A stretch of DNA of 64,000 nucleotides from positions 170,562,001 through 170,626,000 of the forward strand of contig CM075977.1 in NCBI GenBank assembly GCA_038087875.1. Direction: 5' to 3'. How positions within the stretch are numbered: position 1 is the first letter of the stretch; every line of letters begins with the position of its first letter. This document shows, one piece after another, positions 10,246-60,005 of this stretch. The notes under the pieces were generated by a model. That model saw only the letters and a list, made by a program, of their open reading frames with translations. It was not told the DNA's origin and did not search any database. Source of the DNA: Malacoraja senta. Lineage: Eukaryota. Both the position numbers and the translations under genes were made by a program.

Positions 10246-11146
10246 AAGGTACACAAAAATGCTGGAGAAACTCAGTGGGTGCAGCAGCATCTATGGAGCG
10301 AAGGAAATAGGTAACGTTTCGGGCCGAAACCCTTCTTCAGAATGATAGGGGGTGGGGAGAAGAAAGGAAAAAAGGAAAAAGGCGGAGGAGGAGCCTGAGG
10401 GCTGGGGGAGGGGAGGAGACAACCAGATGGCTGATGAAGGGGAGGGGACAGCAAGGGCTAGCAGAATTGGGAGAATTCAATGTTCAAACCCCCAGGATGT
10501 AGACTGCCCAAGCGGAATATGAGGTGCATTTCCTCCAATTTACGGTGTTGCTCGCTGTGGCCATGGAGGAGACCCAGGACAGAGAGGTCAGATACGGAAT
10601 GGGAGGGGGAGTTGAAGTGCTGAGCCACCGGGAGTTCAGGTTGGTTATTGCGGACCGACTGGAGGTGTTCGCTTGGTCTCACCGATGTAGATCAGCTGGC
10701 ATCTAGAGCAGCGAATGCAATAGATGAGGTTGGAGGAGATGCAGGTGAACCTCTGTCGCACCTGGAACGACTGCTTGGGTCCTTGAATGAAGTGGAGGGG
10801 GGAGGTGAAGGGACAATTGTTGCATCTCTTGCGGTTGCAAGGGAAAGTACCAGGGGAGGGGGTGGTATGGGAGGGAAGGGAAGAATTTACAAGGGAGTTA
10901 CGGAGGGAGCGGTCTTTGCGGAAGGCAGACATGGGGGGAGATGGGAAGATGTGGCGAGTGGTGGGGTCACGTTGGAGGTGGCGAAACTGACGGAGGATCA
11001 CTTGTTGTATGTGACGGCTGGTGGGGTGAAAGGTGAGGACTAGGGGGACTCTGCCCTTGTTGTGAGTGGGGGGATGGGGAGAGAGAGCAGTATTGCGGGG
11101 TATGGCAGAGACCCTGGTGCGAGCCTCATCTATGGTGGAGGAGGGG
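10246..11146 (-). mobile_element. 5'-truncated Penelope-like element (GIY-YIG endonuclease C-terminus + 3' repeat with hammerhead motif)
   Basis: Minus-strand ORFs ..PCNRKRCNNC..FTCISSNLIYCIRCSRCQLIYIGETKR and HFNSPSH..LEEMHLIFRLGSLHPGGLNIEF; 12-bp TSD AACCTGTACTTA at 10234-10245 and 11147-11158. Confidence 0.9.
10311..10340 (-). ncRNA. Minimal hammerhead ribozyme motif in PLE 3' repeat
   Basis: Minus strand CTGAAGA-A-GGGT-TTCG-GCCC-GAAACGTTAC: CUGANGA core, stem II, GAAA, palindromic AACGTT stem III. Confidence 0.7.
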
Positions 11147-12384
11147 AACCTGTACTTACATGCAGGACAACATCCTGGTACCAAGCACTGATCAAAGGAG
11201 AGTCTAACATTGAACTTGATGTTGAAAGGCTTTAATTATTTCCATTTTACTCCATCAACCACTTGCAGGAAGCAACGTTGATTAGAAAGACAACTGGACT
11301 GGGCACATAAATGCCATGGCCACACAGTGGTCAGAGCCAGAGCATCCCCGGCTGCAAGAGATCCATCTCCTGACACCCTAAAGGCTTCCCACCACCTACA
11401 AGGCACAGATCAGGAATATGCCAGATACTCTCCACTGGCCTGGATTAATTAACTGCCAACAACAATCAAGAGGTTCAACATTATTAAGGACAAAGCAGCC
11501 TTTATGCTTGACATGCCATCCACCAACCTAAACCTTCCTCCAACTCCTCCTCTCTCCAAATGTGAACATACCTGCTGTATATATTAACTACAAAGTACCT
11601 TGGCATTTGGTTGCCTCAGACCACAACTTCCTTATCCTGACCCTACTGGCAAGAGTGAGAAGGGCAGCAATTATATTGAAACACCATGACCTGTAGGTTC
11701 TTCTCGATTTCACGCACTCTTCTGAGCTGGAAATCTATTGCAGGATTCAAATCCTACAACTCCCCTACCCAGCAACATTGTGGAAATATTTTCACCTGAA
11801 GGACCTCAGAGGTTTAGGAAGATGGATCACCATCATCTTCCTAAGGGCAATTAGGGGTATTGATTGCTGGCCTTAGCAATGGTGCCTACATCTCAAAAAA
11901 TGACTAGGAAATAAAAAGATTCAACTTCACATTGATTACGTGCTTCTTAAAGTTCTTTTTTTCAGGAAAATTTCCAGACTTTTCAATAAAACAGAAGGGT
12001 TTTCAAAATGTGGGCATTCAGTGAAAATGCTGCAGGGCACGGTGCAATTATTTTTGCTCTTCAATTAATTTTAATGGAAGATGAAGTGTCCATCAGTGTC
12101 ACTCATACCAGGCAACAGTTTCAACATTCTATTGAGTTTTGGATGAAGATTTGGATGGATCATGAACGATCCAGCTTTCCTCAGGCAATAAGGCCCGCTG
12201 GAAGTCTGAGTGAATATGGTAAAAAAATTTGCTCCTTTTAATTACTCAGAAGAAATCCTGTTCACGTCTCCATGACCTTTCTTATGAGTTGTGCAGAATA
12301 AAATAGTCTTGCGAACTTGGCAGACAAATTGCATGCTTTGCTATGGCAAGTGTAGCAAAATGAAGTGTTGTTTTATAAAAAGCA

Positions 12385-12600
12385 AAACACAAAATGTTGG
12401 AGCACCACAGCGGGTCAGGCATCACCTGAGGAGGGAATGGACAGACCATGTTTCGGGTCGGGACCCTTCATCAGACGAGGGTCCTGACCCAAAGCATCGT
12501 CTGTCCATTCCGTCTGCAGAAGCTGCCTGACTTGCCGAGTTTCTCTCGCACTTTGTGCTTTGCTCAAGATTCCAATATCTGCAGTTTCTTATGTCTCCAG
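12385..12600. mobile_element. Inverted pair of PLE-derived hammerhead mini-repeats
   Basis: Minus strand CTGATGA-A-GGGT-CCCG-ACCC-GAAACATG (12448-12474, canonical CUGAUGA) back-to-back with a degenerate plus-strand copy. Confidence 0.75.
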
Positions 12601-13669
12601 TAGTGTTATAAAAAAAGGAGCATAAAACTGACAAGTTTCTTAAAGTTCTGCATTAACTAATCACAGAGAATGGATTCCAGCTTCAACATTATACTCCTTG
12701 GTATTGTCATTTTATTAGTGATAATTATCATGACACACTGTGTTTGGAATTTCTGGCTATCATTTTGTAATATTCATTACTATCTTGGGCATGCTTACAG
12801 TTTTTTGGGGCCACAGGAGCCAGAGTATGGTGTTGAATAACGTTCCCAGAAGGCTATTATATTGCTACATCGTTGACCTTACTAGTACAGAATCAGTTGA
12901 AAACAAATTACTACATACTGTATGACAGGAAAGTTTGTTAAAAATACTGTTTCCTACTCTGGTAACAATTAAAGGATTTCTACTCGAGGTAAAGGGGCCT
13001 GGAGTCATTGCAAAGTTGCATAACGAGTCCAGAGCTAAAATTAATCAACTCAAGGAAAGGTTGAAGAATTTCAAATGCAGATTTTATCCATCACTAATGG
13101 CACGTGTAATTTTTGCCCTGGTCGGAAAATACTTGTGCCAGACGTAGGCCATATCTTTCTGCATAGAACTTACAGGAGACTCTTAAAATTGATGTTCCCC
13201 ATATTTGGACATCAGATCTAATTTCTATTTTAGTTATACCTTTCTACCTTGTTGACTACCAGGGATCATTAAATGATATGGTTCCATTTTCAGTCTGCCA
13301 ACGCTATTATCTCACAAAAGCAGCATAAACACCCCTGAAAAGTCTTATCCACAATAATCTCTAAAATGAGCACATGAGGAAGAGGAAAAAGTGATTGCTG
13401 TTTGGAAGCCCAAGCACAATCAGCGATTTGAGGAAGTTGCAAAGCTGGTAACGTTGATATCAATCACATACTGATTTGAAACCATACTGGTTGGAGCTCC
13501 TAAATTCATGCTGGGTGGGAAAACGAGAAACTTGCATTTCAAAAGCATTTTTCAAGACACGAGTAGATTACTTTTAAAATGTTGACACATTCCATCCATG
13601 GAAAAACAGCTGTCAATTATTGAACTGCACTGTCCCCTATACAGTGCTGTGAAAGAATAGGACAACTTT

Positions 13670-15981: not shown

Positions 15982-17031
15982 CTTAAACTCACAATGCTAA
16001 AACTGCCAAGATTTAAAAAACCATGATATCTGATGACATTCAGCACTGGGAAAGTAGGGTAGAAATCAATCTGTTCCTTCGTAATATGCTGGCATTTTAT
16101 TTCACAAAATGTTTTATTTTACTGGCTGTTTTCACATTTAAACGTTCAGCTGCTCAACGCATTCATCCAGGAAATGAAAGAAAACACATTGCCTGTATTC
16201 TACTATCATTGTTTTTACCTGCTAACTCATTTCATTAAACACATTCCTTTAAATAATTACATTTGTATCTAAATTAAATTGCCCAAAATGAGCAATTCAT
16301 TGTTCAATCCTCACAGAATTCCCAATAAAAATAATGAACATGTCAGAAATCTAGAGTTGTATGGGGACAATATTCATGAGATATTGCATTTGATTTTGCT
16401 TTTGAGGTCCAGTACACACACTGAACAAAGGACTTGCATTCACCCATCCATCTCCGAATTGAACGGGTTCAATGGGTTGTCTCTGCTGTCTTTGTCACGA
16501 TGTTGAGCATTTACTTATTTTTTTCTCCATCCTTATTAGTTAATTGTTTAGAGCTGCTACATTTTTAGAGAGGGGTAAGGACAGTAGCTTAAACAATTAA
16601 TTAAGTGTAAGATTAATACATTTCACAACTTCTTATCCATTACTTTCAGAGATTAGCAGCAGAACATGCCTTTAGGATACTAAATTCATGGGGAAAAGAT
16701 TACAACGGTATTGACTGAGGATGAGATGAGGGAAGAGTGCGCTTCATGGGTTAAATTGTTGTTTTTTAAATTTTAATAGATCGTGTATCTTGCACACATT
16801 TTCCCCATCTTAAATCATTTTCCCCATCTTAAATCAGAAACCACATACTGTGTGTCTCACTCTGATAAAAGCCACAAGAGAACAATCATCACAGTACAGT
16901 AAAATCATGTATATATTACGTTATGCCCTTCAGGCCATTATGCCCTACTGTTTATATTATGTTAGACAGTTAGTTACTGATAATATTGTAACTGCACCAT
17001 TTAAAATCCTGTCAAGAATTGTAGCACACTC

Positions 17032-17248
17032 TGTGTTGGAAAGAACTGCAGATGCTGGTTTAAATCAAAGGTAGACACAAAATGCTGCAGTAACTCAGCG
17101 GGACAAGCAGCATCTCTGGAGAGAAGGAATGGGTGACGTTTCGGGTTGAGACTGACTTAGACTCTGAAGAAGGGTCTCGACCCGAAACATCACCCATTCC
17201 TTCTCTCCAGAGATGCTGCCTGTCCCGCTGAGTTACTCCAGCATTTTG
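17032..17248. mobile_element. Palindromic hammerhead mini-element with TSD
   Basis: Arms ~17076-17150 and ~17175-17250 are reverse complements; CTGAAGA-A-GGGT-CTCG-ACCC-GAAACATC at 17164-17191; TSD TGTAGCACACTC at 17020-17031 and 17249-17260. Confidence 0.88.
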
Positions 17249-17851
17249 TGTAGCACACTCGGGTTGTTTCAAATCAAAATTAGCCATAGATCTTTATTAT
17301 ATGTACATTAAAAAAAGCAATGGCAAAAGATATCTGGTTATTGAATTTAAACAGATTAAAAAAAAACAACTAAGAAACAGTGACACTTGCAAACTTCAAG
17401 AAGACATCAAAGGTTTCAAAGGTCTTTTATTGTCACGTGTACCAATTAAGGTACAGTGATATTACCATAGAGCCATACTAAAACAGAGAGTTATGCACCA
17501 TTGGGCCAAGTACAAAATGCTTTTTTGTCTTTTTCTTCGTAATGTAATTTAGTACTACTTGAACATGATGTCAGACCCCAGGAATTACAATCCCTGCTGA
17601 GAACTGCTTGTAAGTTCCTTGTGTACTCTGCAGTTTGGGGCCAGCCGCACAAAACAATTATGAAGCTTTGTTTTTAATTTCTAATCACCGAAATTAAGAG
17701 TCGGGCAAGCACCACAATCCTCCAAACGTAGCTTGTTACCGTGACATTTAGGCCTCCCATGTGTGATCTGCTCAGAATCCTGTGCAATTGAACTTGCAGG
17801 ATATTACTTGGTCATAACCAATCATTTTTTAAAATAATTTTGAACTCACCA

Positions 17852-18453: not shown

Positions 18454-18548
18454 CAGATAAGCTAATGACCTTTTCCAATCTCCTGCTCGCCTTTCACTTT
18501 CAGACTGAGGAAGGGTTATGACCTGAAACGTCACATGTTACTGAGTTA

Positions 18549-19042
18549 AGGGCATGTCCCACGGGCATGCGACTCCATGCGGCAAGCGCGACCTAACCGC
18601 AAGCGGGGGCCGCGCGGAGGTCGAGTGATCCCCGTACAGGGCCGGTCCCACCAGCATGCGGCTGCATGCGGCAAGCGCTACCAAATCGGAAGCGGGGGCC
18701 GCACGGAGGTCGAGTGACGTCAAGACGGTGCGTACGGCGGCGAGGCGGTGCGCACGGCCTCGATGCAGCTGCGTCCGGCCTCGAGGCGGCTGCGTCCGGC
18801 GTCGAGGCGGTGCGCACTGCCGTCTATGCGGCGCGCACGGGCTCGATGCGGCTGCGGGCCGGCAGGCCGTTGCGGCACGGAATTTTTGAACAGTGTCAGT
18901 TTTTCGGAGCCCCGCGCGATGTCGGGACCAGCTCCGCACAACTCCATACGGCCCCGCGACCTCCGCGCAGCCCCCGCACGGCCCCCGCTTGCGGTTAGGT
19001 CGCGCTTGCCGCATGGAGTCGCATGCCCGTGGGACAGGCCCT
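18549..19042. mobile_element. GC/CpG-rich MITE with ~68 bp TIRs, same terminal motif as 7006 and 44206, inserted in a hammerhead repeat
   Basis: AGGGCATGTCCCACGGGCATGCGACTCC... / ...GGAGTCGCATGCCCGTGGGACAGGCCCT; flanks TTA/TAA; internal direct repeat ~18577-18628 vs ~18665-18718. Confidence 0.85.
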
Positions 19043-20384
19043 TAACTCCAGCATCTTCAGCTATCGGTAGTATGTGGGTGCTGATTCCTGATCTTTGCTT
19101 CCACTTATTTTACCTCCTTACTGTCCCTACACAACATCCACATTTATTAAGGATGAATTTATTTGTTTGTGTAGGAAGGAACTGCAGATGCTGGTTTAAA
19201 CCGAAGATAGACACAAAATGCTGGAGTAACTCAGCAGGACAGGCAGCATCTCTGGAGAGAAGGAGTGGGTGATGTTTCAGGTCAAGACCCTTATTATTTG
19301 GGTATGTTGGATGCTGATATGCAAGTTATAAATTTGTTTTTTTTTGCAACATGTTTCAGGAGATAAAATAAAACATTGTTTCTGAATTTCTCAATGGTAC
19401 TGCACCCATTTTCAAACGCACGCCTTGTTGTTAAGAGCATTCAGCCATACTGTAAATGAATCTACCCTGGACCAATCATAAGGACAAACATCAGAAATTA
19501 ACAATTTGGGACGAGATGGTCTGATGCTCTCACTTAACCGGGTCTATTTACAGAATGTGCTCAGTCTCTTCTCATTTCCTTCTGCCTGACCAGACCTGCA
19601 GTCCTTAGGTCCCTGCTGAATCAAAAATCTAACTTCCTTTAAATCTCTGAACCTGCTCAGAATCTGTAACGGGTCTGATCTGATACATGGGAATGTAGTA
19701 AAATTGCTAACCGTTTAAAATAAACATTTATGATTTTGCTACGAAGAGTGCCTGGGGAACTCTTTCCATACCGCACCTAGCATCAGGTTTCCTCAGTTCA
19801 TTAGTTATATTCCTGCATCTCTTTTCCTGAGCCAGCAAAATTCATTTCCAGTTATATGATTTAAAACACTTAGATTATGTCACCTCCAATTGCTTTTTAT
19901 TTTAAATGTGAAGAAATCCAACTCTTTTAACTCCATGACAGAGTGATTTTAATTGGTACAGTGCCTGCCAAAAGTTACTAACAATTGGATTGTGATATTG
20001 ACACACCAAAATGCACAAAGAGTTTAAGAAGTCACTGAATGGTTGCAGCACAAGGAGCCACCATTTGGGACCATCTGATCCTTAGTGGCAGTCATTTAAA
20101 AATATCCCAGCTCATACCACTCTACTGCTGTGTCCCCATGGCCCAGTATATTCATCCCTTTGGCTGTTGCACATATAGTTAGTAAACTGAGCACTCAAAG
20201 TTATCCTCTGCTCCATTTCCTTGTCAAAATGGTTGAAATGTAAGGGAACTTAGGAAAACGCAAGCCTTATACCCCATTCTGCAAAATGAACAATAAGCTA
20301 TCTGCTGGAGGAACTGGTAAAGCAATTGCTAATGTTTCAGGTTCAAGCCTTGCATTAGGACTGATGCAGGGTTTCGACCCACAG

Positions 20385-29000: not shown

Positions 29001-32000
29001 AAGAGCAAGGAAAGTTCCAACACAAATCTCTGCACAGATCCCAGGGACCATCTGAATCAACATAGGACTGCTGGGTAACTCCATCAGTTCCGAGTCTCGA
29101 CTATTGAGACTATTTGAGTAAGAAGGTTCTCAACCCAAAACCTCACTTAGCCATTTGCTCTACATTCGCTGCCTGACCTGCTGAGTCCTTCCAGCGCTGT
29201 GTTCTTTTCCATTAGTTCAACGATCATGTGGACGCCAGCTTCAAATTCAGCACAGGCCTTGCACCTTCTAAATGCCACCTGAACTGGAACATCAGCTTGC
29301 TGGCACAGAAGGTCAAACCGGGCCAGATGTGGAGCACAAGATAGCTTTTGTCACCTCACCGTTGCATCTCTGCCAATGCCTATACTGTTGTCTGTTGGCC
29401 AGTGAGGTAATAGAGAACTCCCCAGCCAGTGCAGTCCGAGGCTGTTCTTTAAGATTATTCTCAGTCTTGTTCTTTCAGCCAGCAAATTCCCAATAGCCAG
29501 CTGCAGCCATTAGGAAGGCACAGCAGGGCCGCATATGGACATGCAAAGGATACAAGATTGTGTGCAAGTGACTAGATGTTAATTCTTAACAATTTAACAA
29601 AAGTTGATTTGTACATGTAGCTTGCAATATCAATTATGCCTGAAATATCAATTTTTCCCCATTGATTTCATAGGTATTGTGGCCACACAGAGTCAGTAAT
29701 AGTCACCAGCAGAGGGAAGATGTGGAATTTGTGAACTGGAAATCAAAGTTACACTCATTATGGTGCAACTGAGTGAGTTGGCTATGGGGAATATCCCAGC
29801 CAGAATGGGACCATCTCATTTGCCTCATCCCTTTCTCTTGCTCTTACACTTTATCCTGAGGCTTTGTATTCTTCCTGGTGTATTGCCAGTGGCAAAGGTT
29901 AAGGTCTCTCAAATGTATGATTGCTCAGTGTACACCTTGCATCTTGATATCTTACTTGGCAGCATGGTGAGGAAGCAAGTGGCTGGTTGGGAGGTTAAAT
30001 GGCCTCTGCAATTGTTTGTAGTGTGTCAGCGTAAGAACCTGAGGGGGTGAGGTGTGGAGGGGGGGATCAGTGGAAATTTAGAGAAAATAGAATAGGAAGA
30101 ATTAATATGTGTGTTTTTGATGGTTGGTCTCGACCCAGTGGGCCAAAAGCTATTTCCATGCCATACGACTTTATGAGCAGATATTTTGGCCCAGCATTTC
30201 ATGGGAACCTTGGACCACCTACTCTTCCCTCTCACGGTCCACATTACTGTTTGCACAGCTTCAGGCAGCAACAAAACAAAGACACAAGATGCTGGGGTAA
30301 CTAATTGTGTCAGGCAGCATTGCTGGAGAACATGGATAGGTCACGTTTCAGGTTGGGAGTCTTCTTCAGACTGATTATGATTAGCTGGAAGGGCAGAAAG
30401 CAAGAAGAGCAGAGGAGCAGAAGCAGTTTCTGTAGAAGGCGGAAAGATGATGAGAAGATGTGACAGGCGGTGAGATCACGTAGATCTGGAGAACATGGAT
30501 GAGTGACTTTTCAGGTCTGACCCTTCTTAGTATCTGAAGAAGACCCGCTGAGTTACTCCAGCACAATGTGTCGTTGTTGTGACTTGCCTGGTTTTGCTCT
30601 ACCCCTCCTCTCTTTTCCAGCTATATCCCCCTACTCCAATTAATCTGAAGAAGGGTCCTGATCTGAAACATCACTTGCCTATTTCCCTTTGCCTGTGCCG
30701 AGTTCCTCCAGCAGTTTGTGTTTTGTTCAAGATTACAGCATCTGAATCATTTTTTGCGTCTCCAGAGCAGCCCTTCTGGCTTGATGATGGGAAAAAAATA
30801 ACCTTCTTAAAAATGTAGATTGCAATGCCTTTTGGAAGCGAGGGTTATGTGCACCCTGAGACCAAACCAGGATAAATTCTTTAAAAATCTGGTTCCCATT
30901 GCTTTCTTACGGCTTGCAGTTGATTGGCAATGACAACAGTCCTCAGATTCATAATGCAAAAAACATCTGGAGTAGTCTGGCCTGGTGAGCAGGGTAACTA
31001 TCAAAGTGCTGATAGTTCAGCCAATACTCAACTGGCAATGATGCATAGGCCAGCAGAGCATGCACATCACTACGTCAGTCTCTGGGCTCGGCCACAGTCC
31101 GTGTACATTCTACATGCTGCCTATCAATGTCTTTCAATTGTAGAACAACTGTTATAAAACAAGCTAAACGGCAGAGTTATTTCAGTGCAAAGGGTCTGGT
31201 AAGCTGTCTTCCCATCCTCTGAGACAAATCTTGTATAGTCTTACCATTGGAAATCAATGCAGAATCATAATGTGTTACAGATTACAGCAGCCTGACAACA
31301 GTTACTTCAAGAAGTAGGTTCAAGAGCAGCTACTTCCCTTTACCCATCAGGTTCTTTAACCACCCTATTCAATCCTAAGCAGTTACAGACTACAATTACT
31401 TTTTGATCACCTTTCCGCCTTCCATAAAAACTGCTCCTGCCCTTCCGTCCTTCTAGCTTTCTTCCCCCCCTACAATCAGTCTGAAGAAGACTCCCAACCT
31501 GAAACGTGACCTATCCATGTTCTCCAGGGATGCAGCCTGACCCGCTTAGTTACTCCAGTACTTTGCGCCTTTTATGTAAACATCAGCAGTTACTTGTTTC
31601 TACACCTAGAATCTTAACACTTCTGGTTACAGAAGTAAAAGGGTATAGGGAAAAGGATATTTTTAAAAAATGGGAACAAAATAAAGTACTGGAGTAACTC
31701 AGCAGGACAGGCAGTGTCTCTGGAGGACATGGATTGGTGATGTTACGGGTCAGAACCCTTCTTTAGAATCAAAGTGTGGTGGCAACATTTGTTGAAGGAA
31801 CAATCACAGCTATGAAAATGATCGTCAAAGGAAGCAAAATGGGTCAATTTAAAATGTCAAATATTGGGGCAATAATATTGTTGGGAGTGTACTTCAAACA
31901 ACGGGGAGAGAAATCGGAGAGAAAAGAGCAGAGAGAACAATTGGCCAGTATCTTTTTCTTAGGATTGAAATGTCCAACACTACAGGACATATGTATAAGA

Positions 32001-38555: not shown

Positions 38556-38559
38556 AAAG

Positions 38560-39240: not shown

Positions 39241-39561
39241 GCCCTCCGTGCCCTCCGCTCCCACCCTCAATTATAGAGATCAACTGGTATCTTAGTTCTC
39301 CTTTTCTTTACTATGTTTATTTCAATTATTGTGTTTCCTGTGATTCCACACCGCTGCTTTGAAGTATGTCGCGCATGCGTGCTGGACGGGTTCTTCACGT
39401 AATCCCTCATCGTAACTCCTCATAAAAACCAGATCAAACTTCAAACTGGTAAGTTCTCGTTTAATCTTACTATTTTTGTTGTCTCGTGATAATAAAACTG
39501 ATTTGTATCTTAAAGGACAAGTGTGCCTTTTATCCGTTCTACTAGTCAGATCCTTGAACCA

Positions 39562-39702
39562 ATGTTCAAGAAGGAACTGCAGATGCTGGAAAATCGAAGG
39601 TAGACAAAAATGCTGGAGAAACTCAGCGGGTGCGGCAGCATCTATGGAGCGAAGGAAATAGGCAACGTTGGCTGAAGAAGGGTTTCGGCCCGAAACGTTG
39701 CC
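39562..39702. mobile_element. 141-bp hammerhead mini-element with perfect 15-bp TSD
   Basis: TSD CAGATCCTTGAACCA at 39547-39561 and 39703-39717; antisense PLE 3' repeat joined to CTGAAGA-A-GGGT-TTCG-GCCC-GAAACGTTGCC (39672-39702). Confidence 0.9.
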
Positions 39703-43150: not shown

Positions 43151-43378
43151 ACAACATCATGTCCTAACGGCTGTAATCAATACCATGACCAAAGAAGGCA
43201 AGTGAGCCAAAAGCCTTGGAAAGACAAAACGCTAGAGTACCTCAGGGGGTTAGGCAGCATCTCTGGAGAATATGGAAAGGTGATGTTTCTGGTCAGGGTG
43301 CGTCTTAAGACAAGAATGGTCCCGATCTGAAATGCCATCTATCCGTGTTCTCCAGGGATACTGCCAGACCTCTTGAAT

Positions 43379-43662
43379 ATTTCGCTTGGGTAGTTTACAC
43401 CCCAGCGGTATGATCATTGACTTCTCCAATTTCAGGCAGTCCTTGCTTTCTCCTTCCCCTCCCCAGCTCTCCCACAGCCCACTGTCTCCACCTCATCCTT
43501 TCTTCTTCCCGCACCCCCCCACCCCCACATCAGTCTGAAGAAGGGTCTCGACCTGAAACATCACCTATTCCTTCGCTCCATAATGCTGCCTCACCCGCTG
43601 AGTTTCTCTAGCATTTTTGTCTACCTTTGATTTTTCCAGCATCTGCAGTTCTTTCTTAAACA
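43379..43662 (+). mobile_element. PLE 3' fragment with hammerhead motif, inserted into another hammerhead repeat
   Basis: FRLGSLHPSGMIIDFSNF tail; CTGAAGAAGGGTCTCGACCTGAAACATC at ~43534-43562; 8-bp TSD TCTTGAAT at 43371-43378 and 43663-43670. Confidence 0.8.
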
Positions 43663-43750
43663 TCTTGAATCACTCCAGCATTTTGTCTTTCCTTAGTAGA
43701 CCAGCATTTGCAGTTCCTTGTTTCCACGGAGCCGAACACCACATTCAACA

Positions 43751-43879
43751 GTCCGAAGAAGGGTCTTGACCCGAAACGTCACCCATTCCTTCTCTCCAGA
43801 GATGCTGCATGTCCCACTGAGTTGCTCCAGCATTTTGTATCTACCTTTGATTTAAACGAGAATCTGCAGTTCTTACCGA
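43751..43879 (+). mobile_element. Monomeric hammerhead mini-element
   Basis: gtccgaagaagggtcttgacccgaaacgtcacccattcc...gcagttctt; imperfect 14-bp TSD caccacattcaaca / catcaccttcaaca. Confidence 0.75.
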
Positions 43880-44205
43880 CATCACCTTCAACAATCTGTC
43901 GAACATTGACTACACTTTTATGGAACTTTGTACCTGCACCCCTAGGTCTCCATTTTACAACACCCCTCATGGTACTAACATTTACTGTGCAGATTCACAA
44001 GGATGTTACCGGGATTGGAGGTTTTATAAGGAGATTCTAGATGGATTGTGCTCTTATTACCTGGAGGTTAGGAAGATTTGAGGTGACTCAGCAGAAGTAC
44101 ATAAAATCATGAACAGTATAGGTAAGGTTAATGGTAACTTTTTTTCACAGGGTACGGAGTCTAACACTAGAGGGCATAGGTTCAAGGTGATAGGGGAAAG
44201 ATTTA

Positions 44206-45045: not shown

Positions 45046-45330
45046 AATAGGAAGGAACTGCAGGTGCTGATTGATACCAAAGGTAGACACAAGGTGCGGG
45101 ATCAACTCAGCAGGTCAGGCAGCATCTCTGGAGAAAAGGAACAGGTGACATTTCGGGTCGGAACCCTTCTTCAGACTGAAAGGGGGTGATAACTGGAGGT
45201 AGGAAAAAGCCAGAACGATCAGGGTTACTTGGAATTAGAGAAATCAACATTCATACCAATGGGTTGTAAGTTGCCCAACCCAGATATGAGGTGCTATTCC
45301 TCCAATTTGCGTGTGGCGTCACTCTGATAT
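45046..45330 (-). mobile_element. PLE 3' fragment with hammerhead motif
   Basis: tgacatttcgggtcggaacccttcttcagac (antisense hammerhead core) plus antisense GIY-YIG tail gggttgtaagttgcccaacc..atgaggtgct. Confidence 0.75.
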
Positions 45331-45362
45331 TAAATTAACGAAAAAGGTTAACACGTTGCAGT

Positions 45363-49104: not shown

Positions 49105-49772
49105 ATTTGATAAAATTAGGCAAATCTTTTATTAACATCTTTTGGTAATGTTAGTAATTCACCCTTATCTGATTTGATTTTTGTAATTGTATTTTCCTTT
49201 TCGCGTTTTTTCAGCTGACGTGCTAAAAGTTTCTGTGGTTTATCGCCAAATATGTGGACTTCAAATATGTTAGAAACATTACACCTAGAAGAGATAAGAC
49301 TCCTCCTAGCAGGTAAACCAAATCACTTCCACCTGACATAGTCTGCATTTATAGAATTATTACAAATATAGGGTGCAAAAGTACTTTAAAAAAAAAATTG
49401 AGGTCAGGTAAGGGGGGATGCTAGTTGAAGAGTTGGTATGTCCCATTTACGTAATGCTCATAAAAATATTTGTTTCTCTCTTTTTCCTCTTTCTCTTTCT
49501 CTTTCTTTTCTAGGGTCTATTTCTTAACTCTTTTTCTTTTGTTTTTTTAATTTTGCTCTTATAGGGTCTTCGTCCTTTTTTGTTGTCACATTTTCTACAC
49601 TTTCACTTTTTCCTTAACCTTCTTCTTTCTTTCAATCTTTTCTTTTTCTAGTGTAAAAAATAAATGGAGTACATTAATTGTAAGAAGACATAAGTGACGA
49701 GTACTAATGTATGTGGTTGTAATGTAATGTACTTCTAATAAATAAAAATTAAAAAAAAAAAATTAAAAAAAA
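49105..49772 (+). mobile_element. L1 3' end with poly(A), preceded by an inverted internal L1 segment (twin-priming-like structure)
   Basis: 49105-49250 duplicates 51485-51630; 49251-49365 encodes an L1 ORF2-like C-terminus (MLETLHLEEIRLLLAGKP..F); T-rich 3' UTR, AATAAA and A-tail at ~49737-49771. Confidence 0.75.
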
Positions 49773-49774
49773 GA

Positions 49775-52700
49775 TTCCCATTTCATACAAATCTCCAAAA
49801 CTTTTAATTCCTAATCTTTCCCAAAAGGTGTACACTTTATCAATAAGAGATGGCTTGAATGAGGGGTTATTTACTATTGGAGTTAAAAGCGATAAATTTC
49901 TTACTTTCAAAGTTAGTTTTATTTGTTTCCAAATTCGAATTGTATTGTGAATAATTGGGTTCTTCTTATATCTTGTATTGTTTAATTTTATCGGGGAAAA
50001 GAGGATCGCTCCTATATTAAAAGGAGAACAATCCTCTTTCTCCATTCTTATCCATTCTACCTGTTGGGCAGAGCTGTCCAACCAATTAATTATGTTTTTA
50101 ATATCTACTGCCCAATAGTAGTAAAAAAAGTTTGGGAGTGTCAGTCCCCCAAATTCTTTAGGTTTACACAGATGTTTTCTTTGGATTCTATGCACTCTAT
50201 AGTCCCATATGAAGTTAGTAATACTAGAATCTAATTTTTTAAAGACGTTTTTTGGTAAGTGTATTGGAATAGATTGAAATAGGTATAATATATGTAGTAG
50301 AAAAATCATTTTTATAGCATTTATTCTACCTATTAAAGACATCGGCAAGGTTTTCCAGAATTTAATCAACCCATTCAGTTTAGTTAGTAAAGGCATAACA
50401 TTTGCATTAAATAATGATTTATATTTTCTAGTAATTTGGATACACAAATACTTAAATTTTTCTGTTGCAATTTTAAAGGGAAATTTTAACAGATGTGTCG
50501 AGTCTTGTGGTTTTAACGTCATAATTTCACTTCCAATTTATTCTATATCCTGAAAAGGAGCCAAATTCCTCCATTAAATTTAGTATGTTTGGTATACTAA
50601 TTTGCGAATTTGTGATGTATAATAATACGTCGTCTGAGTATAGTGAGATTTTATTATTTGAATCTTTGGTATTATATCCCCGTATATTCGGATGGCTTAT
50701 ACTTTCGGCTAAAGGCTCTATCACAAGTGCAAATAGTAGGGGTGATAGTGCACACCCCTGTCTATTGCCCCTTGTTAAATTAAATTTTAAAGATAACATA
50801 TTATTAGTCAGTATTCTAGCTGTCGGCTTATCATATAATAATTTAACCATGAAACGAAATTCTCTCCCATGTTAAATTTTTGCAATACTTTATAAAGATA
50901 TGGCCATTCTACTTGATCAAATGCTTTTTCTGCATCCAATGAAATAATTGATACATCTTCTTCTTCAGTTTTTAGTGAGTACATTATACTAAACAAGCGT
51001 CTTAGATTATTGGCTAAGTATCTTTTAGATATAAACCCCGTTTGATCCGGGTTTATTAGTTTGTTAACGTATTTACTCAGTCTTCTCGCTAAAGTCTTTG
51101 CTAGTATTTTCTGATCTGTATTTAAGAATGCTATAGCTCTGTAAGAGCCAGGTTCTTCTAGATCTTTATCTTTTTTTGGTATGAGTATAATGGTTGATTC
51201 AGCTACTGTTTCTGGTAATGTGTTTTCCTTAAAGGCATGAGTATATAATTTTTGTAGACGGGGAGAAATTATCTCATGGAATCTTTTGTAAAATTCGTTG
51301 CTAAAACCATCTGATCCTGGAGTTTTGCCATTTTTCAACGAGTTTATTGTTTCTTCTATTTCTTTAAGTGTAATCTGAGCTCCTAACTCCTCTTGTTCCA
51401 ACAAAGTAAGTTTAGGAAGGTTGCAGTTATCTAAGAAATTTGTTATTTTAATGTTATCTGCTGTAGTTTTAGATGTATATAAGTTTTGATAAAATTGGGC
51501 AAATCTTTTATTAATATCTTTTGGTAATGTTAGTAATTCACCCTTATCTGATTTGATTTTTGTAATTGTATTTTCCTTTTCGCGTTTTTTCAGCTGACGT
51601 GCTAGAAGTTTCTGTGGTTTATCGCCAAATTCAAAATGTTCCTGTTTTGTCATTTGAAATAATCTTATTACTCTTGCCGATAAAATTTTATTTAATTTAA
51701 ATTTCAATAAGGCATTATCTAGGTCTAATTGTCTGATTTCTTGTTCTAACTGCTGTTGTTCTGTGTTATTCTTTCTATTTTGGAAGGCTTGATATGAAAT
51801 TATAACTCCTCTCATGAATGCCTTAAAAGTTTCCCATAATAACGAAGGTGAAATACCTGTTGTATCATTGGTCTCAAAAAAGAGGTTCATCTGTTGTTTT
51901 AAATATGTACTACCCTGTGGGTTATTTAGAATTTGGGGATTAAACCTCCAGAATGCCTTTCTATCCGTCATTCCTTCTATTTTAATGAAAAAGTTAACAG
52001 AGAGTGATCAGAAATACTGCAATTATGATATTTAGGGCTAATTGTATACGGGATCAATTTCGTCTCTACTAAAAAATAGTCAAGTCGTGAATACATTTTA
52101 TGTCCCGTCGAATAAAATGAGTATTCCCTCCCAACTGGATTGACAATTCTCCATACGTCTGTTATATTTGTATGTTTTATATATGTATTCAGGAGTTCAC
52201 TCGTTTTAGATTTTAGATTACTCCTTTTATGTTTTGCAGATTTATCCAAATATGGATCTAAGACTCAGTTGAAATCCCCCCCTATTATCAAATGTTGATA
52301 ATTAAACTCTGAAATCATATCCAGAATTTTCTTAAAGAATTGAGGGTTATCAAAATTAGGCGCATAAATGTTTATCAGTAATTGGAGTTGAGTGAATTTC
52401 TCCCGTAACTATAACATACCTTCCCTCCTTATCTAATATGGTGTTTTTGCATTTAAATGGTATACCTTTACGAATGATAATAGCCATCCCTCTAGATTTA
52501 GAAGTAAATGAGGAATAATATGTTTGCCCGATCCAATTTGCCTTCAATCTTATCTGTGTTTGTTGTTTCAGGTGTGTTTCCTGCAAAAACATTATGTCAC
52601 AATTCAGTGATTTTAATTGAGCACGTACCTTGCCCCTTTTAATTGGTTCATTAGCGCCCCTTATATTCCAACTACAGAACGTGACTCCTCCTGACTTCTT
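49775..52700 (-). pseudogene. L1 ORF2 (APE + RT), fragmented
   Basis: ORFs 52356-52592, 51977-52249, 50808-51971, 50527-50850 and 49749-50522. Confidence 0.9.
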
Positions 52701-56319: not shown

Positions 56320-56640
56320 CAGGCCATTGGGCCCCTCCAACCTGGCCACCATTCAATGAGATTCTGGATGATTTGCCCTCAGCCTCATCTCTTCTGTACC
56401 AGTTTCCCTTAGGCTTTGGTTCTGCAATCTTTCAAAAATGCATGTACCTTGAGCAAAAACTGCCAGTGATCTAGGTATTGAATTCCAAGGATTCACCACC
56501 CTCTGTGACAAGAAGCTTCTGCACACTTCAGTTTTAAATAAAAGGTTCCCAAGCTTGTAATTATGTCTCTCCTTCAAATCTCTCCCATGAGTGGAAGCCA
56601 CGTCTACCCTTCATGCTCCCTCAGGATCTTCAATGTTTCA
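56320..56640 (-). mobile_element. Decayed CR1 3' fragment (another at ~57230-57450)
   Basis: LFKTEVCRSFLSQRVVNPWNSIP. Confidence 0.7.
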
Positions 56641-58093
56641 ATTTGTACACTAGCTTGTAGATACCATTGCCTCTAGGTTAAATAACAGCTTATTTTCATT
56701 AACAATCCGAGTCTTGAACCACACTGCACGACACTAATTGCAACCATACCTCAGTACTGGAGTACTATGAAGTTTGTGCAAGGGCTGCAGTGTGTACTTG
56801 CCATTGTCTGCTTATTTAGTATAACTGAATCTAATTGTATTATTGTATATTGTACATTTGTGTTGCTGTATTTACCTACCTGTTAAAGTTGTAACATTTA
56901 AGAATTTCATTAGTCCATTCCATAGGACAACAAAACACTCTCAGGGTTTCGGCCCAAAACGTTGCCTATTTCCTTCGCTCCATAGATGCTGCCTCACCCG
57001 CTGAGTTTCTCCAGCATTTTTGTCTACTCTCAATGACTAGTCTTGACTAAAATATCCAGCATTTGTTGCCTTTGTTCTACCAAATGATAAAGGCTTTTGT
57101 GTGTTCTGCCACTTTGCTGATTGAGTTTGCAAGTTGACAGATTCTTCAGGAAGTTGGTAGATACTAGACAGCAGTGGATGCTGTGTTGATAATTGGGGTT
57201 GAGATTCACATGTGTTATAGAATGTTACAGTCTGGAGACAGGCCCTTCAGCTCAACTTGCCCACACCGGCCAACATGTCCTAGCCACACTAGTCCCACAT
57301 GCCCGCATTTGGTCCATATCCCTCCAAACCCGTCCTGTCCATGTACCTGTCTAACTGTTTCTTAAATGTTGGGATAGTCATTGCCTCAACTACCTCCTCT
57401 AGCAGCTTGTTCCATACATCCACCACCCCTTGTGTGAAAGAGTTACCCCTCAAGTACTCTGTCAACGAACGTTCCCTTTGTAAGCCTTAACCTCTCGGTT
57501 CTTCGCTCCTTGGATTTCAGATTATTGTTCCTGGAAGGCTCTCGGGGCAAGTTGTGGGAAATCTAATTTTCTGTCTTTGGTTTAAACTGTATGCGGGTTG
57601 AATATACATGGACCAATTAAACTGAGCAGATCTCGACTGAACATCCCTTACAAAATTCACATCAATAGTGGTACTTGCCATTCCTTCGGCATGTGCACAG
57701 ATTGTGCTCGTCCTTCATTCTTCAATTGTGTATCACAGATTGCACATCATCAACATTTTCTTCAAACAAGGAGCACATTAAAAACAAGAACAGGCACACT
57801 GAGAATAACTTGCTATCTCATAGAATTTATATCAAGTCTTTGTTTTTAATGCAGTTGCTACTTTTAAGTTAATTTACCTGAAAATGGATGGCATCAATTT
57901 TAATCGCAGACAGTTACAAATGGGCCAAGACAAAGTAGAATGATAATGAAGGGATGCGGAATGCTTCTGCTTTAGCTGCGTGACTGGGGTCTATAGTAGG
58001 ACCAGGTGGATGTAGCATATCTTTGCTGTTTAAATTGGGCTTAAACTGGACTTAAAACAACCAAACAGACACTTGCAACATCAGAAACAAGGA

Positions 58094-58320
58094 TAGACAC
58101 AAAATGCTGGAGTAACTCAGCGGGGCAGGCAACATCTCTGGAGAGAAGGAATGGGTGATGTTTTGGGTCGAGACGTCACCCATGTGCTGTCTGAAGAAGG
58201 GTCTCAACCTGAAATGTCACCCATTCCTTCTATCCAGAGATGCTGCCCGTCCCGCTGAGTTACTCCAGCATTTTGTGTGTATCATAGGTTTAAACCAGCA
58301 TCTACAGTTCCTTCCTACAT
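58094..58320. mobile_element. Palindromic hammerhead mini-element with 14-bp TSD
   Basis: TSD ATCAGAAACAAGGA at 58080-58093 and 58321-58334; inverted arms around gtctgaagaagggtctcaacctgaaatgtc. Confidence 0.85.
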
Positions 58321-58920
58321 ATCAGAAACAAGGAATTGGAGATGCTAGTTTACAAAAAAGGACAAAGTGTTGGAGTAACCCAGTGGGTCAGGCAGCATCT
58401 CTGGAGAACATAAGTGAGGTTTCAGGTTAGGACCCTTGTTCAGACTGATTGTAAGAGGGTTGGGGATGGGGGAAAAGAAAGCGGGGAGAGAGGAGAGCAG
58501 GTGATAGGTAGACACACTGTTTTTGGTTGGAACAAAGGCTAGATATTTGGTTTTTGGTTGGAACAAAGGCTAGATATTAAAATAGAAAGTGTGAGACAAA
58601 AAGATTGCAGTGTTGTGAATTTTGAAGCCAGAGGAAGGAATGTGGGTGGGGGATGAGGGAGGGGAGAAGTAAGTGAGAATCAGCTGGTCAGAAAGGGGAG
58701 GGGGCGGGAGTGAGGGTTGTAGGGGTCACTTGAAGTTTAAGAATTCAATGTTCATACTGTTGGGTTGTAAGCTACAAAAGGAGAATACGAGGTGTTGTTT
58801 CTCCAGTTTGCCTGTAGACTCATATTGGCAATGGAGGAGACCCAGGACAGAAAAGTTAGTATGGGAATGGGAAGAGGAGTCAAAATAGTTAGCAACTGGG
58901 AGATCCAGTAAGCCTTGGTG
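58321..58920 (-). mobile_element. Older PLE 3' fragment
   Basis: Antisense GIY-YIG tail (ttcaatgttcatactgttgggttgtaagc...) plus degenerate hammerhead repeat. Confidence 0.7.
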
Positions 58921-59564
58921 GCAAAGGCATCTTTGCTGGAAAGAGAGGTGGAGACATCTTTCTTAATTAATTCCTATAAGAGCCAGATTTGGACAGACCT
59001 TAAAAAGGATATGCAATCAACAGTTTTGGGAGAGTCTGCGGTTTCAGGGCTGCATGCATGGAGATAATTTGTGGTGAAATACAATAGGAATGGACAAAGC
59101 ATGTAGAATAACCGGCTCATATTCCTGCCAGCCACTTCAAATGAGAAAGGCTGCCTCTGTGCTGATGTTGGCACAGAAAAGCTACATTTCAAAGGATTGA
59201 CTTGCATGCATTGAGCTCTCGGTCTGTCCATGGCCTGGAGAGATCACCACAAGTAGTTTGATACCTTTGGCAATGTGCCTCTGGCAAAACAGGAAGAGAA
59301 ACACTATCTGCTGATGTCAACCTCTTCACAGCCAAAGGCATCAACATCGCCCCATTTGCAATGCAATAGTGCAATCAAAAGGTGGAACTGTTGGGAATAC
59401 TCTAATTCCCAACAGGTGGAACTGTTGGGAATACTCTACGTTTTGCTCCAGTTTTAAAATTGTATAACAATCCTGATATTTTCATTTCAGCTTCCATATT
59501 GAGACCCAGTAGTTTTCTTGTTGTTACTGACGTTTTACAATTAGGTTAAATAAACAATACAATG

Positions 59565-60005
59565 GTTGCCAAACATTTTAACTCCCCTTCCCATACTGAC
59601 CTTTCTGTCCTGGACCAACTCCACTGTCAGAGACAGGCCACACGCAAATTGGAGGAAATGCCTCATATTTCGCTTGGGCAGCTTACAACCTAGCGGTATG
59701 ATATCTCTCATTTCAAGTAACTCCTGCATTCCTTTCTCACCCTCCCCTTCCCCCCACCCTCTCAGTAATTCTACTAGTTCCACTGTTCACATCTTTGTAT
59801 CCCTGTTGTTAGCACATCTTCCCCAGCCATCGATGGGCCATTATGGACTCCATCCTTCCTGAGATAATCTGTTACCAGCCCTGTTTTGTGCTGGCCTTCT
59901 CTATCTTTCAGTCTGAAGAAGGGTTCTGACCCAAAATATCACCTATTCCTTTTCTCCAGAAATGCTGCCTGATCCGCTGAGTTACTCTAGCATTTTTAAC
60001 ATCTA
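59565..60005 (+). mobile_element. Older PLE 3' fragment
   Basis: CLIFRLGSLQPSGM; gtctgaagaagggttctgacccaaaatatc at ~59912. Confidence 0.72.

What the first reader, a model, noticed from the sequence alone, without database searches (positions are those of the whole stretch)
10246..60005. Abundant hammerhead-ribozyme mini-retroelements derived from a Penelope-like element
Seen: roughly 25-30 short repeats (e.g. 5735, 6770, 9105, 12385, 17032, 19170, 24600, 30275, 31478, 39562, 43751, 56942, 58094, 59910, 62890) share CTGA[A/T]GA-A-GGGT-NNNG-(A/G)CCC-GAAAC(G/A)T(C/T). In the better-preserved copies variation falls where a hammerhead tolerates it: N7 (A/T), the stem II loop (CTCG/TTCG/CCCG/CTTG) and a T-A to T-G wobble. 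The same motif sits just 3' of the GIY-YIG ORF of the PLE at 10246-11146. Established: PLEs carry minimal type I hammerheads with a palindromic stem III (ACGT) thought to work as dimers, and non-LTR retrozymes are small hammerhead-bearing non-autonomous elements. Inference: this is a very high-copy, protein-free ribozyme retroelement family in a vertebrate, mobilised by PLE RT/GIY-YIG. Caveats: stem I is only ~2 bp by eye, and there is an extra A after CUGANGA.
Basis: partly seen in the sequence, partly recalled or inferred. Interest (0 to 1): 0.85.

Follow-up and report, generated by a model that had tools for sequence, protein, structure and literature searches.

The report
Truncated Penelope tails carrying hammerhead motifs
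The abundant short repeats are the last ~100-135 bp of a Penelope-like retrotransposon, inserted alone or as head-to-head pairs, and they carry the minimal hammerhead-type motif already described for these elements in 2014; most copies are mutated fossils, so this is a known kind of repeat rather than a new ribozyme element.

Summary
A profile built from the window finds 40 repeat arms (5.9% of the window), against 0 motif matches expected by chance. All share CUGANGA-A-GGGU-loop-ACCC-GAAAC-GU-H followed by a conserved tail. The same unit lies 3' of a GIY-YIG ORF remnant whose full-length homologues are RT + GIY-YIG proteins, so the parent is a Penelope-like element (PLE). The motif matches the published PLE min-hammerhead feature by feature, except for a weak stem I.

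The retrozyme reading is not supported. There are no tandem units, and no arm starts or ends at the cleavage site. RNA read depth tracks genomic copy number in both orientations, with no pile-up of read ends. Rfam models and covariation tests give nothing, and only 3 of 23 motif-spanning arms remain intact. Variation among individual copies is mostly CpG decay, including loss of catalytic G12.

Solo units, inverted pairs with 11-17 bp TSDs, unique inner junctions and two 3' ends ~40 nt apart all fit the published PLE insertion mechanism. Two points stay open: what sets the sharp 5' boundary just upstream of the motif, and whether the units are remobilised. First-stage readers of this scan noted the same repeat on other pieces of this genome.

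The parts
10241..10345 (-). Best-preserved unit (subfamily B): motif at 10316-10340, predicted cleavage between 10313 and 10312, short-form tail. It is continuous with the PLE 3'UTR and ORF upstream.
   Evidence: one of two strict full-motif matches
10346..10457 (-). Pyrimidine-rich 3'UTR between the stop codon and the motif (93% pyrimidine in the last 40 nt).
10458..11184 (-). Remnant of the PLE linker plus GIY-YIG endonuclease ORF, in two frames separated by a frameshift (10645-11184 and 10458-10682).
   Evidence: Pfam GIY-YIG E=0.12; Atlas clusters with GIY-YIG/HTH_animal at 0.92-0.95, best (unnamed) cluster 0.97; 3,954 homologues, with the query aligning at the C-terminus of the 750-950 aa ones; two of three long homologues scanned show RVT_1 + GIY-YIG, the third GIY-YIG only
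17032..17248 (.). Head-to-head inverted pair (subfamily A), tails pointing outward. One arm has the long tail and one the short. Perfect 12-bp TSD at 17020-17031 and 17249-17260.
   Evidence: RNA fold -153 kcal/mol
39564..39702 (.). Inversion resembling twin priming (subfamily B): the minus arm covers profile columns 29-126 and the plus arm columns 6-41, with a 13-column overlap. TSD 16/17 bp at 39547-39563 and 39703-39719.
58094..58320 (.). Head-to-head pair (subfamily A) with a perfect 14-bp TSD at 58080-58093 and 58321-58334. The left flank-insert junction is spanned by a contig from a related species, indicating a shared (orthologous) insertion.
   Evidence: X7 record 9; null 0/400 at this score
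25460..25642 (.). Head-to-head pair (subfamily D, CUGAUGA type). TSD 11/12 bp at 25448-25459 and 25643-25654.
12382..12602 (.). Head-to-head pair (subfamily D). AT-rich TSD 11/12 bp at 12370-12381 and 12603-12614 (moderate confidence).
43751..43882 (+). Solo unit (subfamily A) that starts 2 nt before the CUGANGA box and ends with the long tail. TSD 10/11 bp at 43740-43750 and 43883-43893.
43377..43651 (+). 5'-truncated PLE copy: end of the endonuclease ORF, 3'UTR, motif and long tail (subfamily B).
45055..45311 (-). 5'-truncated PLE copy: endonuclease C-terminus, short UTR, motif and long tail (subfamily E).
58333..58905 (-). 5'-truncated PLE copy (subfamily C) with ORF remnant, UTR, motif and tail.
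59574..59997 (+). 5'-truncated PLE copy (subfamily E) with ORF remnant, UTR, motif and short tail.
30256..31770 (.). Cluster of older subfamily C arms, most continuing into pyrimidine-rich UTR: 30256-30374(-), 30485-30528(-), 30542-30576(+), 30641-30746(+), 31476-31591(+), 31670-31770(-).
5740..5855 (-). Solo unit. Further solo units at 9105-9195(-), 19179-19295(-), 23013-23118(-), 24612-24725(-), 24818-24938(-), 29120-29232(+), 41528-41619(+) and 56943-57065(+).
6776..6923 (.). Old head-to-head pair. Further old pairs at 43220-43378 and 62901-63074 (arms 60-66% identical, no TSD recognisable).
18500..18541 (+). Motif-only fragment with an intact core (CUGAGGA type), preceded by UTR-like sequence and cut off 3' by a GC-rich tandem repeat.

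Best explanation
The repeats are the 3'-terminal module of a Penelope-like retrotransposon (PLE): a minimal type I hammerhead motif, about 60 nt of conserved leader, and one of two alternative 3' ends about 40 nt apart. The PLE's own reverse transcriptase and GIY-YIG endonuclease copied this module into the genome by target-primed reverse transcription (inferred mechanism). Reverse transcription starts at one of two internal sites in the leader. That accounts for the short 3' end (...CATTTTGTG) and the long one (...CTGCAGTTCCTTCCTACA). Most cDNAs stop within about 20 nt of the 5' side of the motif, which gives units of roughly 100-135 bp. A minority continue into the 3'UTR and ORF and are ordinary 5'-truncated PLE copies. 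When both cut DNA ends prime synthesis, the result is a head-to-head inverted pair flanked by a single TSD, with a junction unique to that insertion. The hammerhead-type motif is inherited from the parent element, where it is under constraint. In the inserted copies it decays neutrally, mainly at CpG sites, and nothing here shows that cleavage takes part in making or moving the mini-copies. Shown here: the repeat, its link to a PLE, the insertion architectures, the TSDs, the decay pattern, and the absence of any cleavage signature in DNA ends or RNA reads. Inferred: the priming mechanism (by analogy with the Anolis Poseidon element studied in vitro) and the cause of the sharp 5' boundary. [quoted passage not shown]
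For: The repeat and motif are far above chance. The same unit lies 3' of GIY-YIG ORF remnants at 10.3, 43.5, 45.1, 58.4 and 59.9 kb. Two of three long homologues scanned show RVT_1 plus a C-terminal GIY-YIG domain, the third GIY-YIG only. A full-length relative, L002, carries the same motif class in direct repeats about 165 nt upstream and about 295 nt downstream of its ORF. TSDs of 11-17 bp flank whole inverted pairs and a solo unit: six calls scoring 14, 14, 12, 9, 9 and 8 (five from the scan of 22 loci, the 12-bp one found by eye), where random loci reach >=11 in 0.5% and >=14 in 0/400 trials. Every pair has a different inner junction. The two arms of a well-preserved pair belong to the same subfamily. 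The two 3' ends differ by about 39-43 nt, matching the 30-40 bp optional PLE tail that lies between two RT start sites; the Anolis protein also cleaves and extends both strands (PMC11167929). High 5' truncation and adjacent inverted 5'-truncated copies are standard for PLEs (PMC8557442). 35 of 40 arm 5' ends fall at profile column <=19 and none at the cleavage site. In three runs, hundreds of reads or contigs from other copies run through the motif and then scatter. RNA depth divided by DNA word depth is 0.75-1.7e-4 for units and ORF parts alike, both orientations are equal, and no end pile-ups appear. The hairpin at 39.6 kb is about 91% identical to the PLE-linked copy at 10.3 kb in the profile alignment (94.5% over 73 nt by blastn).
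Against: The 5' ends cluster much more sharply than simple processivity loss would predict, and I could not show what sets that boundary. Subfamily A (4 loci, 6 arms) has no PLE-linked member in this window. Summed word depth for the units exceeds that of ORF 3' ends by about 9-100 fold. Both facts would also fit a lineage that propagates independently of the ORF. No full-length parent is present in the window, so its 5' end is unknown. The priming mechanism is taken from one in vitro study of a different PLE clade.
Confidence: 0.75

Rival explanations
1. The ~125 nt unit is a genuine non-autonomous retroelement lineage, comparable to a SINE. It would be transcribed from its own copies or by read-through, recognised through its tail by the PLE reverse transcriptase, and amplified independently of the ORF-bearing parent.
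For: The 5' boundary is sharp and shared genome-wide. Units outnumber ORF 3' ends by about 9-100 fold in word depth. Subfamily A has only mini copies in this window. A 2026 preprint argues that animal retrozymes are non-autonomous PLE derivatives (10.64898/2026.07.22.740005).
Against: Rfam finds no tRNA, 5S or 7SL head and no other hit. RNA depth is proportional to copy number, with both orientations equal, which points to passive transcription. Subfamilies B, C and E have ORF-linked members with the same tails. The sample for subfamily A is only 4 loci. A short template that ends at the parent RNA's 5' end would give the same boundary.
Confidence: 0.2
2. The copies are non-LTR retrozymes: tandem hammerhead units that self-cleave, circularise and are reverse-transcribed from circular RNA.
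For: They carry a type I hammerhead-type motif with a palindromic helix III, are non-coding, and are related to a PLE.
Against: There are no tandem arrays of the unit. The two same-orientation neighbours at 24.7 and 43.7 kb have unrelated spacers. No DNA end lies at the cleavage site. No RNA read ends pile up there. Only 3 motifs remain intact.
Confidence: 0.03
3. The conserved motif is kept in the parent element for a role other than self-cleavage, such as RNA dimerisation through ACGU or RNP assembly at the reverse-transcription start region, and is catalytically weak or inert.
For: Stem I is about 2 bp, or 2+2 bp across an internal loop. On the best copy, stem II has a predicted pair probability of 0.003, and the double-hammerhead core is at -13.3 against a dimer MFE of -29.8 kcal/mol. 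There is no covariation and no in vivo ends. Published PLE min-hammerheads cleave poorly in vitro (PMC4209133). In Anolis, cleavage needed protein and was not required for insertion (PMC11167929). Three tail blocks are as invariant as the core.
Against: The full set of catalytic-core nucleotides is conserved across subfamilies and varies only at N7. That is hard to explain by dimerisation alone. PLEs of fungi and plants have fully active hammerheads (PMC4209133).
Confidence: 0.25
4. The inverted-repeat copies are MITE or foldback DNA transposons.
For: They are long, near-perfect hairpins with TSDs.
Against: TSD length varies from 11 to 17 bp. The inner junctions differ in every copy. The arms are the oriented 3' end of a retroelement and also occur as solo copies and attached to the ORF.
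Confidence: 0.01

Closest known systems
Minimal hammerheads (min-HHR) of metazoan Penelope-like elements (Cervera & De la Pena 2014, PMC4209133)
   Same: Shared features: CUGANGA and GAAA boxes; an unpaired nucleotide between A9 and G10.1; a G10.1-C11.1 pair; no helix III loop, with palindromic 15.2-16.2 (ACGU); a GUH cleavage triplet; location in the PLE terminal repeat; thousands of dispersed solo copies from truncated PLEs, plus pairs on opposite strands 100-700 bp apart; several consensus families per genome; presence in fishes, coelacanth, amphibians and reptiles.
   Different: Helix II is only 4 bp here (7-8 bp in the Schistosoma families). Helix I is 2 bp, or 2+2, rather than 4-5 bp. 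In this window most sequence heterogeneity among copies is explained by CpG decay rather than by compensatory change.
Poseidon element PAc of Anolis carolinensis (PMC11167929)
   Same: The motif layout is the same: CUGAGGA-U-stem II-GAAAC-GUC. There are two RT start sites 30-40 nt apart that define the optional tail. Both target strands are cleaved and extended. Uncleaved RNA is the template. No RNA-seq ends occur at the hammerhead site.
   Different: In PAc the ORF starts inside stem II. Here the leader after the motif is non-coding, because subfamilies differ by 1-3 nt indels. The linker motif CX4CX2C suggests a Neptune-type clade rather than Poseidon; that assignment rests on my own knowledge and a sentence in PMC8557442 and was not tested by phylogeny.
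General PLE insertion architecture (Evgen'ev & Arkhipova 2005; Craig et al. 2021, PMC8557442)
   Same: High 5' truncation, partial tandems, an adjacent inverted 5'-truncated copy that forms inverted repeats, and a 30-40 bp tail.
   Different: Here truncation is extreme and strongly peaked, so the dominant product is a ~100-135 bp unit or a ~140-230 bp hairpin.
Non-LTR retrozymes (Cervera & De la Pena 2020, PMC7229834; Li et al. 2026 preprint)
   Same: Small, non-coding, PLE-related sequences that carry type I hammerheads. 'Monomer' derivatives are also reported.
   Different: No tandem arrays, no unit bounded by cleavage sites, and no evidence of circular RNA.
L1 twin-priming inversions (Ostertag & Kazazian 2001; my own knowledge)
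   Same: An inverted 5' segment joined to a 3' segment with a short overlap, within one TSD. The 39.6 kb copy is the clearest case.
   Different: Most pairs here duplicate the same 3' region in both arms. That needs priming at the tail from both DNA ends rather than internal priming on a single RNA.

Membership tests
PLE minimal hammerhead (min-HHR) | Conserved boxes CUGANGA and GAAA | tested here: met
   Present in the consensus of all five subfamilies, with only N7 varying. Intact in 13 of the 23 arms that span the motif.
PLE minimal hammerhead (min-HHR) | Extra unpaired nucleotide between A9 and G10.1 | tested here: met
   A in 30/33 arms and invariant among subfamily consensuses.
PLE minimal hammerhead (min-HHR) | Helix II closed by G10.1-C11.1 | tested here: met
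   GGGU/ACCC in every consensus. 89.7% of cells are paired, but variation is one-sided only, so there is no compensatory change.
PLE minimal hammerhead (min-HHR) | No helix III loop; palindromic A15.1-C15.2-G16.2-U16.1 and GUH triplet, allowing a dimer | tested here: met
   ACGU followed by C or U in the consensus. G16.2 is retained in 18/36 arms, with the losses being CpG G>A changes. The 4-bp dimer helix is not favoured thermodynamically.
PLE minimal hammerhead (min-HHR) | Helix I of about 4-5 bp between the sequence 5' of C3 and the sequence 3' of H17 | tested here: not met
   Only U2.1-A1.1 and G2.2-C1.2 are contiguous. A 2+2 bp version is paired in 74% of cells, which equals the shuffled control. 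A 2-bp helix I is, however, reported for the D. virilis Penelope variant (PMC4209133).
PLE minimal hammerhead (min-HHR) | Location in the terminal repeat of an RT + GIY-YIG element | tested here: met
PLE minimal hammerhead (min-HHR) | Site-specific self-cleavage | not testable with these tools
   Indirect evidence only: no RNA read-end pile-up at the site in a polyA RNA-seq run of a related species at roughly 1,700-2,500x summed depth. This is a weak negative, because most copies are mutated.
Rfam hammerhead families (Hammerhead_1, _3, _II, HH9, HH10) | Score at or near the gathering threshold of a curated covariance model | tested here: not met
   No hammerhead hit at the gathering threshold, at E<=10 on the whole window, or on a 161-nt stretch. 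This is expected, because the models require a helix III hairpin.
Non-LTR retrozyme | Head-to-tail tandem units, each with a hammerhead, with unit ends at cleavage sites | tested here: not met
Non-LTR retrozyme | Abundant small circular RNAs | not testable with these tools
   Only a polyA library was available. RNA depth is proportional to DNA multiplicity.
5'-truncated PLE insertions | Co-linear with the PLE 3' end, optional 30-40 bp tail, adjacent inverted 5'-truncated copy, TSDs | tested here: met
SINE (pol III head) | Head derived from tRNA, 5S or 7SL | tested here: not met
   No Rfam match of that kind anywhere in the window.

The most novel reading that the evidence does not exclude
The conserved role of the min-hammerhead in this PLE lineage may be to pair two template RNAs through the ACGU palindrome rather than to cleave. 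A dimeric RT-EN particle would then prime on both ends of the staggered DNA break, producing the head-to-head insertions. The ~125 nt motif-plus-leader RNA would be a discrete, preferentially mobilised minimal template, which would account for its large excess over the ORF.
Probability: 0.08. Interest if true: 0.6.

Novelty: new member of a known kind. Interest (0 to 1): 0.25.

Why it matters
The finding is useful mainly as annotation. About 6% of this window, and by read depth a large share of the genome, consists of PLE terminal-module copies. Their hairpin forms resemble miRNA precursors or foldback elements and could be mis-annotated as such. For PLE specialists, these genomic fossils are an in vivo record that agrees with recent in vitro results: two RT start sites, priming from both strands, and an uncleaved template. 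They also raise one specific open question, namely what fixes the 5' end a few nucleotides upstream of the hammerhead box. The finding does not reveal a new class of ribozyme element.

Tried and rejected
- Rfam at the gathering threshold and at E<=10, on the whole window and on a 161-nt stretch: no hammerhead hit, only sub-threshold miRNA-precursor-like matches caused by the long inverted repeat.
- RNAalifold on 17 arms: -0.5 kcal/mol, and it pairs GGGU with ACC(C/U) 3' of the cleavage site instead of forming stem II.
- Explicit pair counts for stems I and II: no better than the shuffled control. Copies decay neutrally after insertion, so covariation among them says little either way.
- Tandem or retrozyme unit: rejected.
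- Coding constraint on the leader: rejected, because subfamilies differ by 1-3 nt indels and the only ATG-led frame stops after 17 codons (read by eye from the consensus).
- Pfam on the ORF remnants at default thresholds: nothing. A lenient scan gave GIY-YIG at E=0.12.
- A bacterial promoter/terminator scan was irrelevant to this genome.
- The Lunse, Weinberg & Breaker paper (PMC5785218) is not held, and no supplements are held for the 2014 paper.
- A literal search for the tail sequence in the paper library found nothing.
- The DNA around the closest protein hit could not be served. The full-length relative that could be fetched (L002) is cut 23 nt upstream of its 5' motif, so it does not show where a 5' pseudo-LTR starts.
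- A putative intron (5' GTAACC overlapping the stop codon, then a polypyrimidine tract and CAG just before the motif) is not consistently present across subfamilies, so it is left as a passing note.

Full report
**Observation.** The pattern CTGAWGANGGGTNNNNRCCCGAAAC occurs 15 times at <=2 mismatches, against 0 expected in shuffles. Inspecting the flanks and a blastn self-search showed that the motif is the 5' part of a longer repeat. A profile built only from the window's copies finds 40 arms at about 27 loci, covering 3,796 bp or 5.9% of the window. The profile reads: 5 nt (TCAGT), CUGAAGA, an extra A, GGGU, a 4-nt loop, ACCC, GAAAC, GUC, then about 60 nt of conserved leader, which is optionally followed by about 40 nt more.

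**Parent element.** At 10.3, 43.5, 45.1, 58.4 and 59.9 kb the unit continues upstream into a pyrimidine-rich stretch and then into ORF remnants. The 179-aa piece at 10645-11184 (minus strand) carries CX4CX2C and ..IY..YIGET.. signatures. Pfam sees GIY-YIG only weakly (E=0.12). The language-model look-up places it next to eukaryotic clusters carrying GIY-YIG and HTH_animal domains (0.92-0.95). An exhaustive phmmer search finds 3,954 homologues, and in those of 750-950 aa the query aligns near the C-terminus. Two of three long homologues scanned show RVT_1 plus a C-terminal GIY-YIG domain, the third GIY-YIG only. That is the protein architecture of a Penelope-like element. A fetched full-length relative (L002) carries the same motif class, CTGAAGA-A-GGCC..GGCC-GAAAC-GTC, in direct repeats about 165 nt upstream and about 295 nt downstream of its ORF. 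The sequence after the motif is therefore the leader of the next unit, as in the published pseudo-LTR model.

**Is it a hammerhead?** Feature by feature, the consensus matches the PLE min-hammerhead descriptor of Cervera & De la Pena (PMC4209133). [quoted passage not shown] The experimentally studied Anolis Poseidon element has the same layout (PMC11167929). Across five subfamily consensuses the CUGANGA box varies only at N7. Stem II varies only by a wobble-preserving A>G change and one CpG transition, and loop II varies freely. In contrast, 37 of 92 tail positions vary (Fisher p=0.12, or 0.029 without the two CpG columns). Per-column identity among arms is 0.91 for the non-CpG core against 0.78 for the tail. 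Three tail blocks are almost as invariant as the core.

Several tests count against a confident assignment:
- No Rfam hammerhead model matches, even at E<=10 on a 161-nt stretch. This is expected, because those models need a helix III hairpin.
- RNAalifold finds no structure.
- Pair counts equal the shuffled control, and stem II shows no compensatory change.
- Helix I is 2 bp, or 2+2 bp across an internal loop.
- On the best copy, stem II has a predicted pair probability of 0.003. The double-hammerhead core scores -13.3 kcal/mol against a dimer MFE of -29.8.

This is consistent with the poor in vitro activity reported for metazoan PLE min-hammerheads and with the protein-assisted cleavage seen in Anolis.

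**State of the copies.** Variation among copies sits on the three CpG dinucleotides and consists only of C>T or G>A changes. G12 is lost in 11/35 arms, C11.1 in 12/35 and G16.2 in 15/36. Seventeen arms are truncated inside the motif. Of the 23 arms that span it, 3 keep core, stem II and ACGU-H17 together, and 2 match the strict pattern (10340 minus strand, 39672 plus strand). Subfamilies A, B and E are about 6-7% diverged from their consensus, and C and D about 16-18%. The left flank-insert junction of the 58.1 kb hairpin is spanned by a contig from a related species, which indicates a shared, old insertion. These are fossils from several waves of activity.

**Architecture and mechanism.** Three forms occur:
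- solo units, for example 43751-43882, which has a 10/11-bp TSD;
- 5'-truncated PLE copies that read through into UTR and ORF (about 11 arms);
- eight head-to-head inverted pairs with their tails pointing outward.

TSDs flank whole pairs: 14/14 bp at 58.1 kb, 16/17 at 39.6 kb, 12/12 at 17.1 kb, and 11/12 at 25.5 and 12.4 kb. Random loci reach the two top scores in 0/400 trials and a score of >=11 in 0.5%. Each pair has a different inner junction, and its arms belong to one subfamily. Pairs are therefore made afresh at each insertion and are not copies of a hairpin master. The 39.6 kb copy has one arm covering profile columns 29-126 and the other covering columns 6-41, which resembles a twin-priming inversion of a single short RNA.

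The 3' ends fall into a short form and a long form about 39-43 nt apart. This equals the optional PLE tail, which in Anolis is the sequence between two RT start sites. The Anolis protein also cleaves and extends both DNA strands (PMC11167929). High 5' truncation and an adjacent inverted truncated copy are textbook PLE features (PMC8557442). The 2014 paper already reported mostly solo motifs from truncated PLEs, plus pairs on opposite strands.

**No retrozyme signature.** No tandem array of the unit exists. The two same-orientation neighbours have unrelated spacers. 35 of 40 arm 5' ends lie at profile column <=19 and none at the cleavage site; no 3' end lies there either. In a polyA RNA-seq run from a closely related species, depth over the unit is 500-1,300 per orientation, with both orientations equal. 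RNA depth divided by the summed DNA word depth from the same species is 0.75-1.7e-4 for units of three subfamilies and for ORF fragments alike. No place is flagged where many molecules begin or end. This looks like passive transcription of embedded copies.

**What remains open.** The 5' ends are sharply peaked just upstream of the CUGANGA box. In three runs, hundreds of reads or contigs from other copies run through ...CCTTCTTCAGAC and then scatter. Word depth for units exceeds that for ORF 3' ends by about 9-100 fold. The simplest reading is run-off at the 5' end of a template RNA that starts at the pseudo-LTR. An independently propagating mini-lineage cannot be excluded from one window (20%).

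**Novelty.** This is a known kind of element. The min-hammerheads of PLEs, their mass occurrence in vertebrate genomes, the inverted and tail architecture, and the PLE origin of hammerhead-bearing non-autonomous repeats are all published (2014, 2021, 2024 and a 2026 preprint). I found no literal match for this family's tail sequence in the paper library, so it counts as a new member of a known kind. First-stage readers of this scan flagged the same repeat in many other windows of this genome. Those notes are unchecked and I do not count them as support.

**Organism.** Names were coded. The closest protein representative lies on NCBI assembly GCA_030144855.1, which I believe from memory is a stingray; this is unverified. 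That the window comes from a vertebrate is plausible but was not tested.

Noticed in passing
window 49749-51971 (-): ORFs of an L1-type LINE (RVT_1 E=6e-17). Unrelated to the PLE.
   Followed up: partly
window 45440-47601 (+) and 47622-48553 (-): Two copies of another LINE (RVT_1 E=1e-28) in opposite orientation, abutting each other. The same LINE's C-terminal region is interrupted by the hairpin at 6.8 kb.
   Followed up: no
window 18549-18856: GC-rich tandem repeats (periods of 89 nt and 21/41/62 nt) directly 3' of a motif-only PLE fragment with an intact core (18500-18541).
   Followed up: no
window 10346-10457, 43440-43534, 45180-45240 and equivalents: In ORF-linked copies, the 40 nt before the motif are 72-93% pyrimidine and usually end in CAG|U, which looks like a 3' splice site. 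In the 45.2 kb copy, GTAACC overlaps the stop codon. This recalls the D. virilis Penelope intron, which ends at helix I (PMC4209133). The signals are not consistent across subfamilies.
   Followed up: partly
window 17032-17248, 58094-58320 and other pairs: As RNA, the inverted pairs fold into near-perfect ~100-bp duplexes (-153 kcal/mol). They give sub-threshold Rfam miRNA-precursor matches (for example MIR7723 at 49.7 bits, gathering score 200). They could be mis-annotated as miRNA genes and could feed siRNA pathways.
   Followed up: partly
window 1-4000: Strong GC skew (0.29-0.37) and AT skew (0.21 in 1-2000, 0.03 in 2001-4000), with several 140-200 aa ORFs on the plus strand. Not examined.
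   Followed up: no
window 35832-38555 (+): Two long ORFs (441 and 400 aa) without a significant Pfam match. They lie inside a region that another first-stage note calls a nested LTR insertion.
   Followed up: no
window 58519-58578: Perfect 31-nt tandem duplication inside the UTR of the PLE copy at 58.4 kb.
   Followed up: no
L002:24-49 and 3159-3184: A full-length PLE relative from an ENA assembly carries CTGAAGA-A-GGCC-TGATC-GGCC-GAAAC-GTC in both flanking repeats. It shares the CUGAAGA-A prefix and the ACGU palindrome with this window's family, despite only ~39% protein identity in the endonuclease region.
   Followed up: partly
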